Positions 6,565 through 13,494 are shown, numbered from the stretch's first letter. The stretch is DNA of 64,000 nt from Selaginella moellendorffii (GCF_000143415.4 NW_003314312.1:377261-441260), one strand, 5' to 3'. Numbers and translations: made by a program. The notes: a model not told the origin generated them from the letters alone.

Positions 6565-8466
6565 TCAATTCCACTGGCATATGCTTTCCACTTGAAAAGA
6601 ACTGACGACTTTTGTTTGTATGCTTGAGGACAAAATGTAGGCAGCTCCATGCCTTGGGTCAATGCTTATCAGCTTGTCTACAGCTAATCTAGCATAATCT
6701 ATCGCATCTTCATGGTTTTTGCAAGATCCAAGAAAGCACACCCAGTCTACAGTGTCTGGAACAAAGGGCATTGTGTTTATAAGGCCCAGAGCATCATCTA
6801 GATATCCAGATCTTCCAAGCAAATCGATCATACAAGCATAGTGTTGTTTCGTTGGATTGTGAAGATAATCTTGTCTCATAGAAGAAAAGCAGCATTTCCC
6901 AGTGTAGAGCTCTCCATCGTGACTGCAAGTGATTAGCATCGAAACAAAGCAAGTCTCTTCAGGATCAATCACTAGCTTCATCTCCAAAAACATTCTTTTG
7001 GCATCTTCGGTATGCCCTTTCTGGGCATATGCGGCAAGCATAGCACTACAAAGAACTGCGTCTTGCAGTGGAATCCCATCAAACATCCTTTTTGCTAATC
7101 TAATTTCTCCATTTTGAGTAAACCCACCTAGCATACAGGTCCAAGACACTAGATTTTGCTGTGGCAACTCATCAAAAACTCGCTTTGCTGAAAAAACATG
7201 CCCACATTGGGCATATGCCGTAAGCATACAAGTTGCCGAAATTATATTCCTCTGGGGCATCTGCTTGTGCATCTGCTCGGCCTCGTCGACGTGGCCGTTC
7301 AAAGCATATGTTGCCACGATGGCATTCCACGTCACCAGATTCCTTTGGGGCATCTCATCAAACAGCCGCTTTGCTTTCTCCACATGCCCCTTGTGGGCGT
7401 ACCCAGTCAGCAGGGAGTTCAACGTAACCACGTCGTGGCGTCGCATGGACTCAAAGATTCGCTCGGCATCTCCTAGATGCCCACTCTGGGCATATGCCGC
7501 GACAATAGCGTTGCAGGATACTAGGGACTTCTCTGGCATTGTGTGAAAAAGATTCTTTGCTCGGTCCAAATCCCCGTGCTGGATATACGCTGCCACCATG
7601 GAGTTCCACGTCACTGTGTTCCAGCTTGGCATAGAATCAAACATTGACTTTGCGCGGAAAAGGTGCCCATTTTGGGCATATACCGCAATGGCGGCATTCC
7701 AAAGAACACCGTCCCACTCGGGCACCTGTACGATTATGAGATCCATTTCTTCGATTTGGCCACTGCTTCCGTAGGATTTAAGCATTGATGCCCAAGAGAA
7801 GAGATCTCTCTCCGGCATCGTATCAAATGTGTTCTTGGCTTCCTCCAAATGCCCATTTCGCGAGAATGCCGCGAGGATCGAATTCCAGGAGACGATGTCT
7901 TGGGTGGGCATGATCTCGAAAATGTGCCTGGATCGATCGAGCTCTCCGTTCTTGCAAGCGCAATCCAGGAAGGAATTCCAGGAGACGAGGTCCCAGGCGG
8001 GCATCTCGGTGAAGAAGCGCTGTGCTCGATCGATCTCGCCGCTGTGAGCGTAGGCCGCGAGCATCGAGTTCCAGGAGATGAGATCGCGCTGCGGCATTGC
8101 AGCGAAGATTTTGATGGACTCCTCGATTTGCTCCTTGCTGGAGAATGCCGCCAGCATCGCGTTGTGCGAGGCGAGGAATGGATTGGGCATCTCGCGGAAG
8201 ACAATTCGCGCCTCTTCCACGAACCCATTCCGGGAGTAGGCATGGAGCATGAGCATCCAGGAGAAATCATCGCGCCGCGCGAGGGCGTCGAAGATCTCTC
8301 GGGCATGATCCACCCGTCCAAATCTACCATACACCTCGAGCAGCTTGTTGGAGACGAATCCCTCGCGCGGAAGATCGAGACGAGATTGGAGGAGAGAATG
8401 CGCTCTCTTCACATCGTTGATCGATCGGCAAGATTGGATGAGCTCTACGCATTCCTGGTGTCTCAT
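6565..8466 (-). CDS. PLS-class PPR protein, mostly 31-aa (S/SS-type) repeats, E-like C-terminus, no DYW
   Basis: 633-aa intronless ORF of tandem 'FDxMPxRDLVSWNSMLAAYAxxG' repeats; HYACMIDLLGRSG tail. Confidence 0.92.
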   Translation of the reverse strand: MRHQECVELIQSCRSINDVKRAHSLLQSRLDLPREGFVSNKLLEVYGRFGRVDHAREIFDALARRDDFSWMLMLHAYSRNGFVEEARIVFREMPNPFLASHNAMLAAFSSKEQIEESIKIFAAMPQRDLISWNSMLAAYAHSGEIDRAQRFFTEMPAWDLVSWNSFLDCACKNGELDRSRHIFEIMPTQDIVSWNSILAAFSRNGHLEEAKNTFDTMPERDLFSWASMLKSYGSSGQIEEMDLIIVQVPEWDGVLWNAAIAVYAQNGHLFRAKSMFDSMPSWNTVTWNSMVAAYIQHGDLDRAKNLFHTMPEKSLVSCNAIVAAYAQSGHLGDAERIFESMRRHDVVTLNSLLTGYAHKGHVEKAKRLFDEMPQRNLVTWNAIVATYALNGHVDEAEQMHKQMPQRNIISATCMLTAYAQCGHVFSAKRVFDELPQQNLVSWTCMLGGFTQNGEIRLAKRMFDGIPLQDAVLCSAMLAAYAQKGHTEDAKRMFLEMKLVIDPEETCFVSMLITCSHDGELYTGKCCFSSMRQDYLHNPTKQHYACMIDLLGRSGYLDDALGLINTMPFVPDTVDWVCFLGSCKNHEDAIDYARLAVDKLISIDPRHGAAYILSSSIQTKVVSSFQVESICQWN

Positions 8467-8768
8467 CCAAGAACACGAAAAGTATTATCGTTAATCTAAT
8501 CTTAACTTTCAAAGCAAGGGGTTGTAGCTCAAATGGTAGAGCGATATAGCCATAGGTAGGTGGATCGATACCCATTTTTTCTTCCTTTAAGATTTTTCTA
8601 ATCCTCTATTATTTAATTTTATGTTGAACTATTCTTAATTTTCAAAGCAAAGAGATGTAGCTCAAATTAGAGCGATGGTCGACGATAGACATATCTCCAT
8701 TTTCTTTTTCCTTAGATTTTAGTAATCCTCTATTATTTTATGTTAATCTATTCTTAATTTTCAAGCAA

Positions 8769-8842
8769 GGGGATGTAGCTCAAATGGTAGAGCGATGGTC
8801 GACGATAGACATAGGTAGGAGGATCGATACCTCCCATCTCCA
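8769..8842 (+). ncRNA. tRNA-Ala-like RNA (74 nt) with non-canonical anticodon arm
   Basis: GGGGATG/CATCTCC-A acceptor with G3:U70; A-box TAGCTCAAATGG; T-arm GGAGG-ATCGATA-CCTCC; anticodon arm ATGGTCGACGATAGACAT. Confidence 0.7.
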
Positions 8843-8913
8843 TTTTCTTTTTCCCTTAAGATTTTTCTAATCCTCTATTATTTTATGTTAATTCATTCTT
8901 AATTTTCAAGCAA

Positions 8914-8987
8914 GGGGATGTAACTCAAATGGTAGAGCGATGGTCGACGATAGACATAGGTAGGAGGATCGATGCCTCCCATCTCCA
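8914..8987 (+). ncRNA. tRNA-Ala-like RNA copy with a D-stem mismatch
   Basis: As 8769 copy except TAACTC in the D-stem and GATG in the T-loop. Confidence 0.55.
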
Positions 8988-9058
8988 TTTTCTTTTTCCC
9001 TTAAGATTTTTCTAATCCTCTATTATTTTATGTTAATTCATTCTTAATTTTCAAGCAA

Positions 9059-9132
9059 GGGGATGTAGCTCAAATTGTAGAGCAATGTCGGACGATCGGC
9101 GTAGGTAGGAGGATCGATACCTCCCATCTCCA
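9059..9132 (+). ncRNA. tRNA-Ala-like RNA copy
   Basis: Same cloverleaf; anticodon arm ATGTCG-GACGAT-CGGCGT. Confidence 0.6.
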
Positions 9133-9290
9133 TTTTCTTTTTCCTTTAAGATTTATTCTAATCCTCTATTATTTAAATTTATGTTAATCTATTCTTAATT
9201 TTCAAAGCAAGGTCGGACGATCGGAGGATCGATACCTCCCATCTCCATTTTTTTATTTTGGAAAGGTTTTAGGGCTACTTGTTATCGCGA

Positions 9291-12200
9291 ATGGCTTTGG
9301 CTCTCGGCTATGGCGCCATGCCATTGCCGAGGCGCTGCTGCTTCAATGCCGCCTCTTCTTCTTTCAATCGGTGAGCTGAGATGTCAATCTCTTGTGTAGC
9401 ACTGAGCATTTGAGCTGAATCGGATTGCGCATTTCATGGATTGAGCGTTCGTTGCGCAGGGTTTTGGTCGTGAGAGCTGCTGCGCGAATGAGCGCTGCGC
9501 AAGAGACTCTCGAGGTGCTGGAATGGAAGAGACTGTCCAGTGCTGTTTCGAGTTTTGCTAGCACTGCGCTGGGAAGGCAACGCCTCCAGGTTCATTGAAG
9601 AAATTTTCTAGCTTTTGCTGATACTTTGAGGCGTGCGTTCTCTCCAGGTTCTCGAACTGCCCAGCACTGAGAGTGCCAGTGAGATGCTTCTCTCGGAGAC
9701 TCATGGCGCATTGGAGTTTGAAGCTCTTCGTGGGAATTCTTGTGACCTTGGAGCAATCCAAACAGATGTGGTAACACAAAGTTTGATACGATTGCTGTAG
9801 GAATTATTTTTCTTCTTCCCTGCAGGTTAAAGTTGGATTGACTCGTGCTAGCAAAGGAGTTGCTCTATCGGGCAGAGAAGCTGCTGCCCTTGCCGCTATG
9901 CTTGAAGCAGCTCGTTCTCTCAGGCATGCTGCTTTCTCTTCGTTTCAAGAAAACAAGGAGAAACAAGAGATTTTGCGTCCTATCTATGATATGGTAAGCA
10001 TGGACACACTTTTCTACAAGCTAACTGCGATGTTTTGCTTGTCAGCTTTGCTCCATTGATGCCGACGTTGATACTACAAAGACGATCTGGAACGCTGTTA
10101 ACGACGATGGTTCGGTGAAAGATTCAGCGGTATAATGATTGAACTAGTGTTCCTTGCTGCTGACGTTTATATTGCAGAGCCCCGAGCTACGAACTGCGAG
10201 AATGGAACAAGCCTCGTGCGAGAGAAAGGTACTACTGAGTGAATGCTTTTGGATACCGTGGAGAGGATGTATGATTTATAATAGCTTCAAGAGCTTATGA
10301 CGAGGATTGTCATCGACAGGCTTGCTGGCGATCCTAATGGTCAGGTTTGTTTATTACGCTGTCTTCAGAAGGTGAAAATCATGTTGAATGTTATCAGGTT
10401 GCCAGCCTTGATGGAAGGCTTTGCGTGGCAGTTTCTACTGAAAACAGTTCGAAAGTGCCAGGTCTACTCTTGCAAAGGTAATCTTGTCTTTGCAACGACT
10501 GCTTTCCATATCACATCTTTTGCAGTTCTGCCGGAGGATTAGTTTCCTACGTAGAACCTTCTGCAGCTGTTGCATTAAACAACAGTTTGTCGCAGGCTAG
10601 AGCAGATGCTGCTCAAGCTGAATACCGTGTTCTGGATGATCTCACGACCAAGGTCTTTCCTCCTTGCATCCCCGCTCTCGCTATAGCTTCCTGAGTCTGG
10701 TTTTGTGGATACTTCAGTTGAGACCTTCTCTCAGCAATTTTTCTTTCACATTGGATATTGTTGCAGATTTTGATGTGGTAAGCTTCACTGCCTTGTTATC
10801 CTTAACTTGTTGGATCTGTGTAGGTGCTGGCTCGTGGAAGATACAGCTCTTCTATTGGAGCGACCAGACCTTCATTTGTACACGCGGAAAGAGACGAATC
10901 GGAGAGTACATTGGACGAGTTTCTAGTTCTTTTGGAAGGGGCCAGACATCCTCTGTTACTAGAACAACACCGTGGAAACTTACGTGAAGCGAAAGTAAAA
11001 CTGAACACGAAACGGAAGGTTGACATATGTGCCTTTCATTTTGCACACTCACCACAAAGCTTCTCCAGATTCTTAACAGGATGAAGTCACGGGCTTTCAC
11101 CAGTGCTCAGGACTATCAAGCGGCAGAGGAAGCTATTACCAAAGCTGAAGAAGAAGTAATCATCGATTTCAGATGCTGTCTCTAACTTTTACATTCAATC
11201 AGCTAGGTTGCAGAGCTGGAGGCCTCCGCACCCGTTCCCATTGACTTCCTTATCAAGAGAGAAACAAAAGTTGTCACCATTACTGGACCGAATACGGGAG
11301 GCAAAACTGCTGCTATCAAAACGCTTGGATTAGCTGTGCTAATGGCCAGAGCAGGTAAGCTTCAGTGTTTATGCCTATTGTTCCTTAGAAAAATTCCTTT
11401 TTGCAGGACTTTACGTTTTAGCCAAAGAACCAGCTCTAATTCCATGGGTTGATAGAGTTCTTGCTGATATAGGAGATCAACAATCGTTAAGCCAGTCTTT
11501 ATCAACGTTCTCCGGACATTTGCTCAGAATCAAGGTGTGTATGGGAAGGCGGCCAGAGTTTTTCGAGCTTACACATTTTTGCAGCGGATCAAAGAGGAGT
11601 CAACGAGCTCTTCTCTAGTTCTTTTGGACGAGGTCGGTTTGCTGCAACATTTAGCAAGTGCTGGATAAATGTTCGAAGGTTTTGCAGGTTGGAACTGGTA
11701 CAGACTTTGTGGAAGGCGCGGCTTTAGGAATGGCAATGCTGGAGTCATTTGCAGCTGGTAGTCTTCTCACTTTGGCCACAACACATCATGGAGAACTCAA
11801 GATGCTCAAATATAGGCAAGTGCTATTCAACAGGCATTTTATAAGCGCCTCAGTTGTGGTTTTTACTTTTGTTACAGTGATGATAGATTCGAGAATGCAT
11901 CAGTCGAGTTCGACGAAGAGAAGCTCAAACCAACTTACCGACTTCTTTGGGGGCTTCCAGGTGAATAGTAGTAACTCATGGAGCGTGTAGTATCATACTG
12001 TTTGGTTTGCAGGACGTTCGAATGCTCTAAACATTGCAGCACGGCTGGGCCTGCCCGAAGAAATCATAATGGAGGCCCGAAGCTTGCACGGAGCAGCCAA
12101 TGCCGAGTTAAACGAGGTATGGTCCCAGAGTTTGGAGGTGAAAATCCGCAAGTTTTACGTGTAAACTCCAGGTGATCATGACGCTGGAACAAGCTCGGCA

Positions 12201-12442
12201 GAAGTTTGAGCACGATTTGTCCAAGAGCCAGAAACTCTTGGGGTAAGCAAGCACGCTTTCCTGATCGATCAACCTGGTATCTTGGTGTTTGCAGGGAAAC
12301 CAAAAGGCATTATCGTGCACTCTCGATTGCTCAGAAAGAGATTGAGGAGTACAGAAAGACGGCTGCGTTGGATGCCAACGATCAGCTCGCAGTGGCTGAA
12401 GCAGCGGCACGAAGCGACCTTAACAAACTCTATCATTCGTAA
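9291..12442 (+). CDS. MutS2: MutS2-like ATPase, probably plastid-targeted, many short introns, no Smr domain seen
   Basis: Transit-peptide-like N-terminus; exons [19 protein letters not shown] (Walker A), [61 protein letters not shown]. Confidence 0.9.
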
Positions 12443-12525
12443 CGCTCCCTGGAAAAGGAATTCCAAGCGAAGAACACTTCCTATTATCCTTGTTTAGACT
12501 AATCTAATTCTAATTGTCAAAGCAA

Positions 12526-12599
12526 GGGGATGTAGCTCAAATGGTAGAGCGATGTACGACGATCGGCATAGGTAGGAGGATCGATACCTCCCATCTCCA
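12526..12599 (+). ncRNA. Solitary tRNA-Ala-like RNA gene of the same family
   Basis: 74-nt cloverleaf with G3:U70, anticodon arm ATGTACGACGATCGGCAT, similar leader ending CAA, T8 terminator at ~12604-12611. Confidence 0.7.
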
Positions 12600-12747
12600 A
12601 ATGTTTTTTTTAGTGCCTACCATCCATATATAACAGATTTCTCCATTACTATCTCAAAAAAAGAAGGAAAAAACTATTTAACTCAAAGAAAGAAGAAAAA
12701 AAAACTAGGCTTTATCAAGAGTGATCGAATGAACGAACGAAGGAATA

Positions 12748-13494
12748 TCAATAGCTCCAAGTTTTCTCCATCATCAGCTTTGGCGGCTTGGAGCTCTCTC
12801 TCGCGAGTGGAATGTCCGCATAGATCTTGAAAGGCCCAGTTCCATCCTTGCTCGCTCTCGACCAGTCCACCACAATGCTCTTGTCCAGCCCCTTGTACGT
12901 CGCCTTGATGCTATCCTCCTTGCTCACCTTCCTCGACACTCCAAAATCCCACGTCTTGGTTCCCAGGTGGAATGCCGGCTCCAAGCAAGCCCCAGATCGA
13001 TCGTGCACGAACGAGTACCTCGCTCTCCCCGCCTGGGACGCGAAATCGTAGCTCAGGCCGAGCTTGTTCTTGGGATCCAGCGTGAGCGCCGCCTCGACCG
13101 CGGTGGAGGATGGATCGCTCTGGTGGTGGGTGTAGCAGAGATTGAGCGTCCTGGAGCCCATGACATTGGCGGTGCTGGAGAAGTGGAACTTTGGGGAGCG
13201 CGAGCCCAGATCGTAGTCGAAGAGGAAGGAGCCGGGCTTCTCGACGCCGAGGGAGAGGCCGTCCAGGGATGGGCCGCTGGCGAAGGTGTCGTCGGTGCAA
13301 GAGGCGCGGAGGAGCAAATCGCCCGCCTCGACCGTGAGGACGCCCACCGCGGACCTGGATGCCGCATCGATTCGCGTCTTGAAACACGCCCGTGGGAAGC
13401 GAATGCCGCCGCCGCCGCCATCGCTGGTGTCGGTGCCGCTGCTCGCGGCCTTTCCCCACGCCATTCTCTCGCTCCCTAAAACCCTAGAGCGCAT
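12748..13494 (-). CDS. OEP24: Chloroplast outer envelope pore protein 24
   Basis: Intronless ORF with AGDLLLRASCTD..GPSLDGLSLGVEKPGSFLFDYD and C-terminal PKLMMEKTWSY; the start could be ATG 13464. Confidence 0.88.
   Translation of the reverse strand: MRSRVLGSERMAWGKAASSGTDTSDGGGGGIRFPRACFKTRIDAASRSAVGVLTVEAGDLLLRASCTDDTFASGPSLDGLSLGVEKPGSFLFDYDLGSRSPKFHFSSTANVMGSRTLNLCYTHHQSDPSSTAVEAALTLDPKNKLGLSYDFASQAGRARYSFVHDRSGACLEPAFHLGTKTWDFGVSRKVSKEDSIKATYKGLDKSIVVDWSRASKDGTGPFKIYADIPLARESSKPPKLMMEKTWSY

What the first reader, a model, noticed from the sequence alone, without database searches (positions are those of the whole stretch)
8518..12599. tRNA-Ala-derived RNA family with intact alanine identity but a replaced anticodon arm
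Seen: four full 74-nt copies (8769, 8914, 9059, 12526) keep the GGGGATG/CATCTCC-A acceptor with G3:U70, A/B boxes, upstream CAA and oligo-T. The T-stem is GGAGG/CCTCC, fully paired but different from typical plant tRNA-Ala (CGGGG/CCCCG). The anticodon arm is 18 nt with an invariant GACGAT core, no U33 and no NGC anticodon. Known: AlaRS reads G3:U70 and ignores the anticodon. Inference: a Pol III RNA that could be alanylated without normal decoding (non-ribosomal Ala donor, tRF source or miscoding tRNA). The compensated stem argues against simple decay.
Basis: partly seen in the sequence, partly recalled or inferred. Interest (0 to 1): 0.8.

Follow-up and report, generated by a model that had tools for sequence, protein, structure and literature searches.

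The report
Decaying cluster of anticodon-less tRNA-Ala genes
A spikemoss gene spacer holds a small, unstable cluster of alanine-tRNA gene copies that keep every signal for being made and loaded with alanine but cannot read any codon; this looks like the known class of plant "tRNA-like" genes or pseudogenes, and no function is shown.

Summary
The genome is Selaginella moellendorffii (scaffold GL377616.1). Four 74-nt tRNA-Ala-like copies (8769, 8914, 9059, 12526) score 36-46 bits on the Rfam tRNA model. They keep G3:U70, A73, the A and B boxes, upstream CAA and T-run terminators. Their 18-nt anticodon arm has loops of 5, 6 or 7 nt, no U33 and no NGC anticodon.

New points:
- Three copies sit in a 145-bp tandem array with three broken units. 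The array fills about 90% of the spacer between a PPR gene and a MutS2-like gene. The fourth copy lies just past the MutS2 stop.
- The other haplotype has only four units, each with different deletions. Only the 8769 and 12526 copies are intact in both haplotypes.
- Two "full" copies carry G10A or G18T.
- The shared T-stem change is inherited once, so it is not evidence against decay.
- They are not SINE heads and not Helenus-1_SMo.
- 8769 and 12526 differ at 0/56 body positions, 4/18 arm positions and 4/26 upstream positions. This points to constraint or gene conversion on the tRNA body.

The scan noted what appears to be the other haplotype of this locus (s1-420305), and tRNA-Ala relics at other loci. 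Verdict: a tRNA-like/pseudogene cluster. A selected non-decoding RNA is not excluded.

The parts
8490..9254 (+). Tandem array of six tRNA-Ala-like units with a 145-bp period, including the outer upstream flank and the last T-run. It fills about 90% of the 824-bp spacer between the PPR ATG (8466, minus strand) and the MutS2-like ATG (9291).
   Evidence: TRF reports period 145, 3.6 copies and 92% matches, plus a period-120 row. Units are listed. BLAST of the unit finds nothing elsewhere in the window.
8518..8574 (+). Unit a, broken. The arm is reduced to ATATAGCCAT, the T-stem is GGTGG, and the 3' T-stem and acceptor strand are deleted. It has A5T in this haplotype.
   Evidence: The other haplotype has a further 12-nt deletion here.
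8651..8699 (+). Unit b, broken. It has G1A and G3A, a D-loop deletion and an A-type arm. The variable region and T-arm are deleted.
   Evidence: The allelic unit carries different deletions.
8769..8842 (+). Copy c1. Intact 74-nt tRNA-Ala-like gene with A-type arm ATGGTCGACGATAGACAT (7-nt loop GACGATA on a 3-bp stem at minimum free energy).
   Evidence: Rfam tRNA 46.1 bits. Cloverleaf at -24.3 kcal/mol. Identical in the other haplotype.
8914..8987 (+). Copy c2. Full length with A-type arm, but G10A breaks the D-stem and A box, and the T-loop has A60G. This unit is absent from the other haplotype.
   Evidence: Rfam 36.3 bits with non-canonical pair marks..
9059..9132 (+). Copy c3. Full length with B-type arm ATGTCGGACGATCGGCGT (6-bp stem, 6-nt loop). 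It has G18T at a universally conserved D-loop position, and G26A.
   Evidence: Rfam 41.0 bits.. The allelic unit keeps G18 but lacks its first 10 nt.
9210..9247 (+). Last unit, broken. A B-type arm fragment is fused directly to the T-arm and acceptor 3' strand, and the 5' half is deleted.
   Evidence: No unit of this form (B-type arm fragment fused to the T-arm) is present in the other haplotype.
12500..12525 (+). Upstream flank of c4, with a TATA-like AT-rich stretch and CAA motifs. It is homologous to the array's upstream flank and spacer (22/26 identical).
   Evidence: Local alignment score 32, reached by 0 of 2000 shuffles.
12526..12599 (+). Copy c4. Intact 74-nt tRNA-Ala-like gene with C-type arm ATGTACGACGATCGGCAT. 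It lies between the MutS2-like stop (12442) and the OEP24 stop (12748).
   Evidence: Rfam 46.4 bits. Body is 0/56 different from c1. Identical in the other haplotype.
12603..12610 (+). T8 run, a putative Pol III terminator for c4. The array copies have TTTTCTTTTT directly after A73, for example 8843-8852.
   Evidence: Read directly from the sequence.
6565..8466 (-). Neighbour: single-exon PPR gene (633 aa). Its ATG is 52 bp from the first array unit, in divergent orientation.
9291..12442 (+). Neighbour: MutS domain V (MutS2-like) gene of 700 aa. It is flanked by the array upstream and c4 downstream, all on the same strand.
   Evidence: Gene call and Pfam hit. Coordinates were converted from L001.

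Best explanation
These are descendants of one nuclear cytosolic-type tRNA-Ala gene. Its variable region and T-loop are of the AGC type. Its anticodon arm was destroyed once, before the copies multiplied. The disabled gene, with about 26-45 nt of its own upstream promoter region and its T-run, was duplicated to both sides of the MutS2-like gene. One copy was then amplified by unequal crossing-over into a 145-bp tandem array inside the PPR/MutS2 divergent spacer. AlaRS needs only the acceptor stem, and Pol III needs only the A and B boxes, upstream TATA/CAA and a T-run. The intact copies (8769 and 12526) are therefore probably still transcribed, end-processed and chargeable. They cannot decode, because their loops are 5-7 nt with no U33 and no common anticodon. 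The array is in flux and is mostly decaying. This fits the 'tRNA-like / tRNA pseudogene' class that PlantRNA 2.0 sets apart, with no demonstrated function. Shown: the anatomy, the descent, the decay and the haplotype polymorphism. Inferred: transcription, processing and charging.
For: - tRNA model matches of 36-46 bits, while ARAGORN calls none.
- The 5' 25 nt equal a wheat tRNA-Ala 5' fragment, and AGGTA...ATCG matches a wheat tRNA-Ala(AGC) fragment.
- The array is a 145-bp tandem repeat, and 3 of 6 units are broken by deletions.
- G10A and G18T occur in two 'full' copies.
- The other haplotype (L002) has 4 units instead of 6. Its spacer is 522 bp against 815 bp. There are 7 gap events covering 299 bases, against 3 single-base gaps in the 3.2-kb MutS2 gene. 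The deletions in allelic units differ.
- Arm hairpins are no better than shuffled sequence, and loop size is not conserved.
- The upstream flank of 12526 is homologous to the array flank.
- No other copy was found in the rest of the window or in 74.5 kb of unrelated S. moellendorffii sequence.
- PlantRNA 2.0 describes exactly this unresolved category.
Against: - Copies 8769 and 12526 are identical at all 56 body positions, yet differ at 4/18 arm positions and 4/26 upstream positions. Homology is not detectable further out. Fisher p is 0.003, 0.009 and 0.001 when the body is compared with the arm, the flank, or both combined. Simple neutral decay since the duplication does not predict this. It needs gene conversion or purifying selection on the body.
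- The same two copies are the only intact ones in both haplotypes.
- Expression was not tested.
Confidence: 0.55

Rival explanations
1. A maintained, non-decoding tRNA-like RNA. Pol III makes a 74-nt RNA that RNase P, RNase Z and the CCA enzyme process and that AlaRS charges. It would then serve outside normal decoding. Possible roles are a non-ribosomal Ala donor, a dedicated source of 5' tRF-Ala (oligo-G) fragments, or a decoy or regulator for AlaRS or for tRNA import. The anticodon arm is free to vary because the function does not use it.
For: - Body 0/56 against arm 4/18 and flank 4/26 between the two dispersed copies.
- Within the array, the arm differs at 6/18 while the body differs at 2/56 and the spacer at 3 mismatches in about 70 nt.
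- The identity set and all Pol III signals are intact.
- The same two copies are intact in both haplotypes.
- The two changed T-stem pairs (49:65 and 51:63) are among those that tune EF-Tu affinity in bacteria and that are altered in staphylococcal non-proteinogenic tRNA-Gly. This point is recalled knowledge, a lead and not a test.
- PlantRNA 2.0 authors allow for functional divergent tRNA-like molecules.
Against: - There are only two independent comparisons, so the statistics rest on a handful of sites.
- Identity between haplotypes is uninformative at 1.4% baseline divergence.
- Most units are decaying, and conserved nucleotides G10 and G18 are hit in full copies.
- The arm has no conserved structure.
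- There is no expression, charging or cross-species evidence.
- Gene conversion among neighbouring repeats could give the same pattern.
Confidence: 0.28
2. A DNA-level role. The A and B boxes act as TFIIIC/Pol III binding sites, and the AT-rich spacers with TATA-like motifs act as promoter or insulator material for the closely packed PPR, MutS2-like and OEP24 genes. The RNA itself would be irrelevant.
For: - The array occupies about 90% of the divergent PPR/MutS2 spacer, 52 bp from one ATG and 43 bp from the other, so both Pol II promoters must lie in or next to it.
- c4 sits between two convergent genes.
- tRNA genes as boundary elements are established in yeast, and are mentioned in PMC13578239.
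Against: - The acceptor stem and other positions outside the boxes (33 nt) are also unchanged between c1 and c4. A box-only constraint does not explain this.
- Both genes tolerate a roughly 300-bp difference in array length between haplotypes.
- No chromatin or expression data are available.
Confidence: 0.1
3. A mobile element: heads of a tRNA-derived SINE, or LTRs of a Helenus-type miniature LTR retrotransposon. One such family, Helenus-1_SMo, exists in this species.
For: - Other windows of this genome were noted to hold tRNA(Ala)-like miniature LTR elements.
- Helenus-1_SMo is described in PMC10886601.
Against: - Every copy is followed at once by a T-run, with no body or tail.
- The units repeat head to tail, with no LTR/internal alternation, no PBS and no PPT.
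- The Helenus-1_SMo LTR has a different tRNA-like sequence (GGGCAGG acceptor, CTGGG...CCCGG T-arm), and its T-arm motif is absent from the window even with 3 mismatches.
- No copies were found in 74.5 kb of other S. moellendorffii DNA or in the rest of the window.
Confidence: 0.02
4. A miscoding or suppressor tRNA. In the A-type copy, the 7-nt loop GACGAUA would present CGA and put Ala at UCG (Ser) codons.
For: The A-type arm can form a 7-nt loop, and Ala identity is independent of the anticodon.
Against: - There is no U33, the stem has only 3 pairs at minimum free energy, and position 37 is U.
- The B and C types have loops of 6 and 3-5 nt, so there is no shared anticodon.
- ARAGORN rejects all copies.
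Confidence: 0.03

Closest known systems
Plant nuclear (cytosolic) tRNA-Ala genes, AGC type
   Same: Identical 5' 25 nt, AGGTA variable region, ATCGATA T-loop, CATCTCC-A 3' end, G3:U70, A and B boxes, upstream CAA and a T-run.
   Different: The anticodon arm is 18 nt and unrelated to CTCGC-TTAGCAT-GCGAG, with no NGC anticodon and no U33. T-stem pairs 49:65 and 51:63 are changed (GGAGG/CCTCC against CGGGG in wheat). The T-stem of Selaginella's own tRNA-Ala was not available for comparison.
'tRNA-like / tRNA pseudogene' class of PlantRNA 2.0 (Cognat et al., bioRxiv 10.1101/2021.12.21.473619)
   Same: tRNA-derived nuclear sequences that gene finders score as tRNA but that cannot be assigned a function. 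S. moellendorffii is in that database.
   Different: I could not check whether these particular loci are listed there. This cluster stands out because its Ala identity and Pol III signals are fully intact, and because its body is unchanged between diverged copies.
Tandem tRNA gene clusters of plants (Arabidopsis Pro homoclusters, Ser-Tyr-Tyr heteroclusters; PMC13578239)
   Same: A head-to-tail, same-strand array of short units, each with its own upstream element and terminator.
   Different: The array is tiny (6 units), the units do not decode, half are broken, and unit number differs between haplotypes.
Helenus-1_SMo miniature LTR retrotransposon (PMC10886601)
   Same: Same species, and it carries a tRNA-like sequence with A and B boxes.
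   Different: The sequence is different, and there is no LTR/internal/LTR layout, PBS or TSD here.
Non-proteinogenic tRNAs and tRNA-like small RNAs (staphylococcal cell-wall tRNA-Gly; mascRNA)
   Same: These are functional analogies only. An acceptor/T-arm module is kept and processed or charged, while decoding is dispensable. In mascRNA the anticodon arm is poorly conserved. (Recalled knowledge.)
   Different: No evidence of expression, charging or any acceptor pathway exists here. The origin and the organism are different.
tRNA-like structures in dicistronic tRNA-mRNA transcripts (PMC8166872)
   Same: S. moellendorffii had the most such transcripts of the species tested (49). These include two 'Undet NNN' tRNA-like loci. 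The copies here flank an mRNA gene on the same strand.
   Different: Neither scaffold of this locus appears in that paper's list with these elements.

Membership tests
Functional decoding tRNA | Cloverleaf with acceptor, D and T arms | tested here: met
   Rfam tRNA model matched 1-71 at 36-46 bits. The minimum-free-energy folds are cloverleaves.
Functional decoding tRNA | 5-bp anticodon stem and 7-nt loop with U33 and a purine at position 37 | tested here: not met
   The arm is 18 nt. Loops are 7, 6 and 3-5 nt in types A, B and C. No copy has U33. Hairpins are no better than shuffles. ARAGORN genes.
Functional decoding tRNA | Anticodon that matches the identity elements (NGC for Ala) | tested here: not met
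   No NGC is present in a loop context. The invariant core is GACGAT.
tRNA-Ala identity (AlaRS substrate) | G3:U70 in a 7-bp acceptor stem with A73 | tested here: met
   GGGGATG/CATCTCC-A is present in all four full copies. Actual charging is not testable with these tools.
Pol III type-2 gene (plant) | A box, B box, upstream TATA-like/CAA, and a T4-or-longer terminator | tested here: met
   TAGCTCAAATGG at positions 8-19 and GGATCGATACC at 52-62. CAAGCAA or CAAAGCAA lies directly upstream, and TTTTCTTTTT or T8 lies downstream. The importance of these motifs is from Yukawa et al. 2000, cited in PMC13578239.
Pol III type-2 gene (plant) | A transcript is actually made and gets CCA added | not testable with these tools
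tRNA-derived SINE | tRNA head followed by a body, a tail and target-site duplications, with many dispersed copies | tested here: not met
   A T-run directly follows each copy. There are no TSDs and no copies elsewhere in the window or in L003-L005.
Helenus (tRNA-bearing miniature LTR retrotransposon) | Two LTRs (TG...CA) around an internal part with PBS/PPT and a 5-bp TSD, plus similarity to Helenus-1_SMo | tested here: not met
   The repeat is a uniform 145-bp tandem. The Helenus-1_SMo LTR sequence from the paper's supplement differs, and its T-arm motif is absent.
tRNA pseudogene / tRNA-like cluster | Disabling lesions that differ between copies and between alleles | tested here: met
   Three units are broken by deletions. 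G10A and G18T occur in full copies. The other haplotype carries different deletions and has 4 units instead of 6.
tRNA pseudogene / tRNA-like cluster | Neutral divergence of the whole gene body | tested here: not met
   c1 against c4: 0/56 in the body, 4/18 in the arm and 4/26 in the flank. The numbers are small, and gene conversion is an alternative explanation.

The most novel reading that the evidence does not exclude
S. moellendorffii must import every mitochondrial tRNA and many plastid tRNAs. In this reading, it keeps under selection a small set of alanine-accepting tRNA bodies that have no anticodon. These would be Pol III RNAs that are processed and charged like tRNA-Ala but kept off the ribosome. 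They could serve as a non-ribosomal Ala donor, as a dedicated 5' oligo-G tRF-Ala precursor, or as a decoy for AlaRS or the import machinery. The T-stem changes at 49:65 and 51:63 would lower elongation-factor binding.
Probability: 0.2. Interest if true: 0.75.

Novelty: new member of a known kind. Interest (0 to 1): 0.35.

Why it matters
If these are only a decaying cluster, the value is practical. The cluster is a clean example of how a disabled tRNA gene can still score as a tRNA. It also shows how such a gene is amplified by unequal crossing-over inside a promoter spacer, and how it differs between the two haplotypes of the reference assembly. Annotators should label these loci tRNA-like, not tRNA-Ala or 'Undet'.

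If the body conservation reflects selection, this would be a plant example of an aminoacylatable, non-decoding tRNA-like RNA. It would give a concrete, sequence-unique probe (the arm plus T-stem) for testing non-canonical tRNA functions in a lineage with extreme dependence on tRNA import.

Tried and rejected
No claim about transcripts is made.
- Copies elsewhere: two metagenome scans and one prokaryote-genome scan for the T-arm/acceptor motif were blank. This was expected and only shows that the motif is not bacterial.
- Cross-species synteny: searches with OEP24 and with the PPR protein found no other Selaginella orthologue. OEP24 found only itself. The best PPR hit was 41% identical. Conservation of the element in other species could therefore not be tested.
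- Genome sampling: three loci around PPR paralogues (74.5 kb) held no tRNA and no relic of the family. This is too small a sample to give a genome-wide copy number.
- Canonical Selaginella tRNA-Ala: none could be fetched. The supplement of PMC11573648 is not held, and literal sequence searches of papers gave only wheat fragments.
- Helenus-1_SMo and SINE readings: rejected.
- Dicistronic tRNA-mRNA list of PMC8166872: it holds no entry for GL377616. For GL377620 it holds only one tRNA-Ala(TGC) entry, at an unknown position on that scaffold.
- Origin of the arm: a deletion of the 3' stem strand (GCGAG) plus filler from the T-loop (shared GATCG/CGATA) is possible. It rests on 4-5-nt matches only and is not claimed.
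- The search of earlier findings by sequence was blank. This means nothing.
Full report
WHAT IS THERE

The window is Selaginella moellendorffii v1.0, scaffold GL377616.1. Window coordinate plus 377260 gives the scaffold coordinate.

The Rfam tRNA model aligns to each from position 1 to 71, at these scores against a gathering score of 29:
- 8769: 46.1 bits
- 8914: 36.3 bits
- 9059: 41.0 bits
- 12526: 46.4 bits

ARAGORN calls none of them. The 5' and 3' motifs each occur five times, against none in shuffles. All four fold as cloverleaves at minimum free energy.

The acceptor stem is GGGGATG/CATCTCC with G3:T70 and A73. The A box is TAGCTCAAATGG and the B box is GGATCGATACC. CAAGCAA or CAAAGCAA lies directly upstream, and TTTTCTTTTT or T8 lies downstream.

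The first 25 nt equal a wheat tRNA-Ala 5' fragment. AGGTA...ATCG matches a wheat tRNA-Ala(AGC) fragment, whose T-stem strand is CGGGG where these copies have GGAGG. The source was therefore a cytosolic-type tRNA-Ala gene. I could not obtain a canonical Selaginella tRNA-Ala. Whether GGAGG/CCTCC is unusual in this species stays open.

THE ARM

Positions 27-44 come in three 18-nt forms and one deleted form:
- Type A: ATGGTCGACGATAGACAT (units 8651, 8769, 8914)
- Type B: ATGTCGGACGATCGGCGT (units 9059, 9210)
- Type C: ATGTACGACGATCGGCAT (copy 12526)
- Deleted form: ATATAGCCAT (unit 8518)

GACGAT is invariant in the three 18-nt forms. The predicted loops are 7, 6 and 3-5 nt. There is no U33 and no shared anticodon. 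The hairpins are no more stable than shuffled 18-mers, with p of 0.12, 0.09 and 0.29. None can decode normally, and the arm is not a conserved structure.

ANATOMY OF THE LOCUS

Three of the full copies belong to a 145-bp head-to-tail array at 8490-9254. The array also holds three units broken by different deletions, at 8518-8574, 8651-8699 and 9210-9247.

The array fills about 90% of the 824-bp spacer between two divergent genes. One is a PPR gene with its ATG at 8466 on the minus strand. The other is a MutS domain V (MutS2-like) gene with its ATG at 9291. The fourth copy lies 84 nt after the MutS2-like stop, between that gene and the convergent OEP24 gene.

The 26 nt upstream of the 12526 copy are homologous to the array's flank and spacer, with 22/26 identical and 0 of 2000 shuffles reaching the score. 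No significant homology is seen downstream or further upstream. The duplicated module was therefore a tRNA gene with its own short promoter region and terminator.

Each copy ends in a T-run with no body, tail or target-site duplication. They are not SINE heads. [quoted passage not shown] No further copy or relic exists in the rest of the window or in 74.5 kb around three PPR paralogues.

THE OTHER HAPLOTYPE

The allelic region is on GL377620.1 (L002). Baseline divergence between haplotypes is 1.4-1.5% in the PPR and MutS2-like genes, with three single-base gaps in 3.2 kb.

The array is far more different:
- It has four units instead of six.
- The spacer is 522 bp against 815 bp.
- There are 7 gap events covering 299 bases.
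- Allelic units carry different deletions.

Only the unit that corresponds to 8769 is intact there. The 12526 copy is identical. In this haplotype, 8914 carries G10A, which breaks the D-stem and the A box. 9059 carries G18T at a universally conserved D-loop base. Its allele keeps G18 but has lost its first 10 nt. The array is an unstable, mostly decaying repeat. Per haplotype, only two copies have a flawless body.

SELECTION OR NOT

All copies share the same state, so it was inherited once. It may simply be the T-stem of the functional ancestor.

A different contrast does carry weight. Between 8769 and 12526 the differences are as follows:

| Region | Differences |
|---|---|
| Body | 0/56 |
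| Arm | 4/18 |
| 26 nt upstream | 4/26 |

Fisher p is 0.003 for body against arm, 0.009 for body against flank, and 0.001 for body against both combined.

Within the array, 8769 against 9059 differs at 6/18 arm positions. The body differs at 2/56, and the spacer has 3 mismatches in about 70 nt. The arm therefore changes faster than even the spacers, partly as adjacent multi-base changes. The body has stayed fixed over a time in which the flanks diverged by about 15%.

Plain neutral decay does not predict this. Purifying selection on the RNA body would explain it, and so would gene conversion between copies 3.3 kb apart. A constraint on the A and B boxes alone would leave the 33 other body positions unexplained. 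The numbers are small and come from two loci only. Identity between haplotypes is uninformative at 1.4% divergence.

MECHANISM I COMMIT TO

One tRNA-Ala gene lost its anticodon arm. The disabled gene was duplicated locally and then amplified by unequal crossing-over in a promoter spacer.

AlaRS recognition needs only the acceptor stem (G3:U70; established knowledge). Pol III needs only the internal boxes, the upstream TATA/CAA and a T-run (Yukawa et al. 2000, cited). The two intact copies are therefore probably still transcribed, processed and chargeable. They do not decode, and no function is shown.

This is the 'tRNA-like / tRNA pseudogene' class of PlantRNA 2.0. Its authors state that pseudogenes and divergent functional molecules cannot be told apart without experiments. 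My weights:
- 0.55: tRNA-like/pseudogene cluster with no selected function
- 0.28: a selected non-decoding RNA
- 0.10: a DNA-level (TFIIIC, promoter or insulator) role
- about 0.05 in all: mobile-element and miscoding readings

CONTEXT

Selaginella has no mitochondrial tRNA genes and a reduced plastid set, and it imports nuclear tRNAs. In S. kraussiana, tRNA-Ala(AGC) isodecoders that differ by 18 nt partition differently between cytosol and plastid. Divergent Ala isodecoders are therefore normal in the genus.

S. moellendorffii also had the most dicistronic tRNA-mRNA transcripts in one survey, including two 'Undet' tRNA-like loci. This locus is not on that list.

EARLIER NOTES OF THIS SCAN

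Note s1-420305 covers 3779 letters, against 4082 here. The difference equals the shorter array of L002, so that note is very probably the other haplotype of this same locus. It is not independent evidence.

Notes s1-423027 and s1-392234 describe tRNA-Ala relics at other loci, and follow-up agents judged them ordinary decay. Notes s1-418384 and s1-392374 on tRNA(Ala)-like miniature LTR elements prompted the Helenus check, which was negative here.

LIMITS

No genome-wide scan and no cross-species comparison was possible with the collections at hand.

Noticed in passing
window 8467-9290 vs L002 14175-14696: The shared promoter spacer of the divergent PPR and MutS2-like genes differs by about 300 bp (815 vs 522 bp) between the two haplotypes of the reference assembly. 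The whole difference is array units. Both genes apparently tolerate it.
   Followed up: partly
window 12748-13464 (-) vs L002 10001-10726: The OEP24 (plastid outer envelope pore) alleles differ by a 9-nt in-frame indel (238 vs 241 aa). The word-based protein search found no relative of this protein at E<=1e-10 other than itself.
   Followed up: no
window 6565-8466 (-): The single-exon 633-aa PPR protein has no precomputed Pfam entry at its gene call and is not in the protein collection by exact sequence. It is nevertheless clearly a PPR protein. Its closest hit is only 41% identical, so it has no close paralogue.
   Followed up: partly
L004 9118-12998: A PPR paralogue gene model on GL377623.1 carries a weak chromodomain (PF00385) hit and overlaps a second 458-aa call with the same hit. 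This may be a fusion with a transposon fragment or a mis-annotation.
   Followed up: no
Supplement file 15 of PMC8166872 (S. moellendorffii scaffolds GL377565, GL377594): Two tRNAscan 'Undet NNN' tRNA-like loci are reported as co-transcribed with neighbouring genes (SELMODRAFT_229902 and SELMODRAFT_416139). They may be further anticodon-less tRNA-like genes and are worth comparing with this family.
   Followed up: no
window 9210-9229 and L002 14495-14520: Several of the deletions that broke array units join short repeats shared by the arm and the T-loop (CGATA, GG). This suggests microhomology-mediated deletion inside the tRNA-like sequence.
   Followed up: partly
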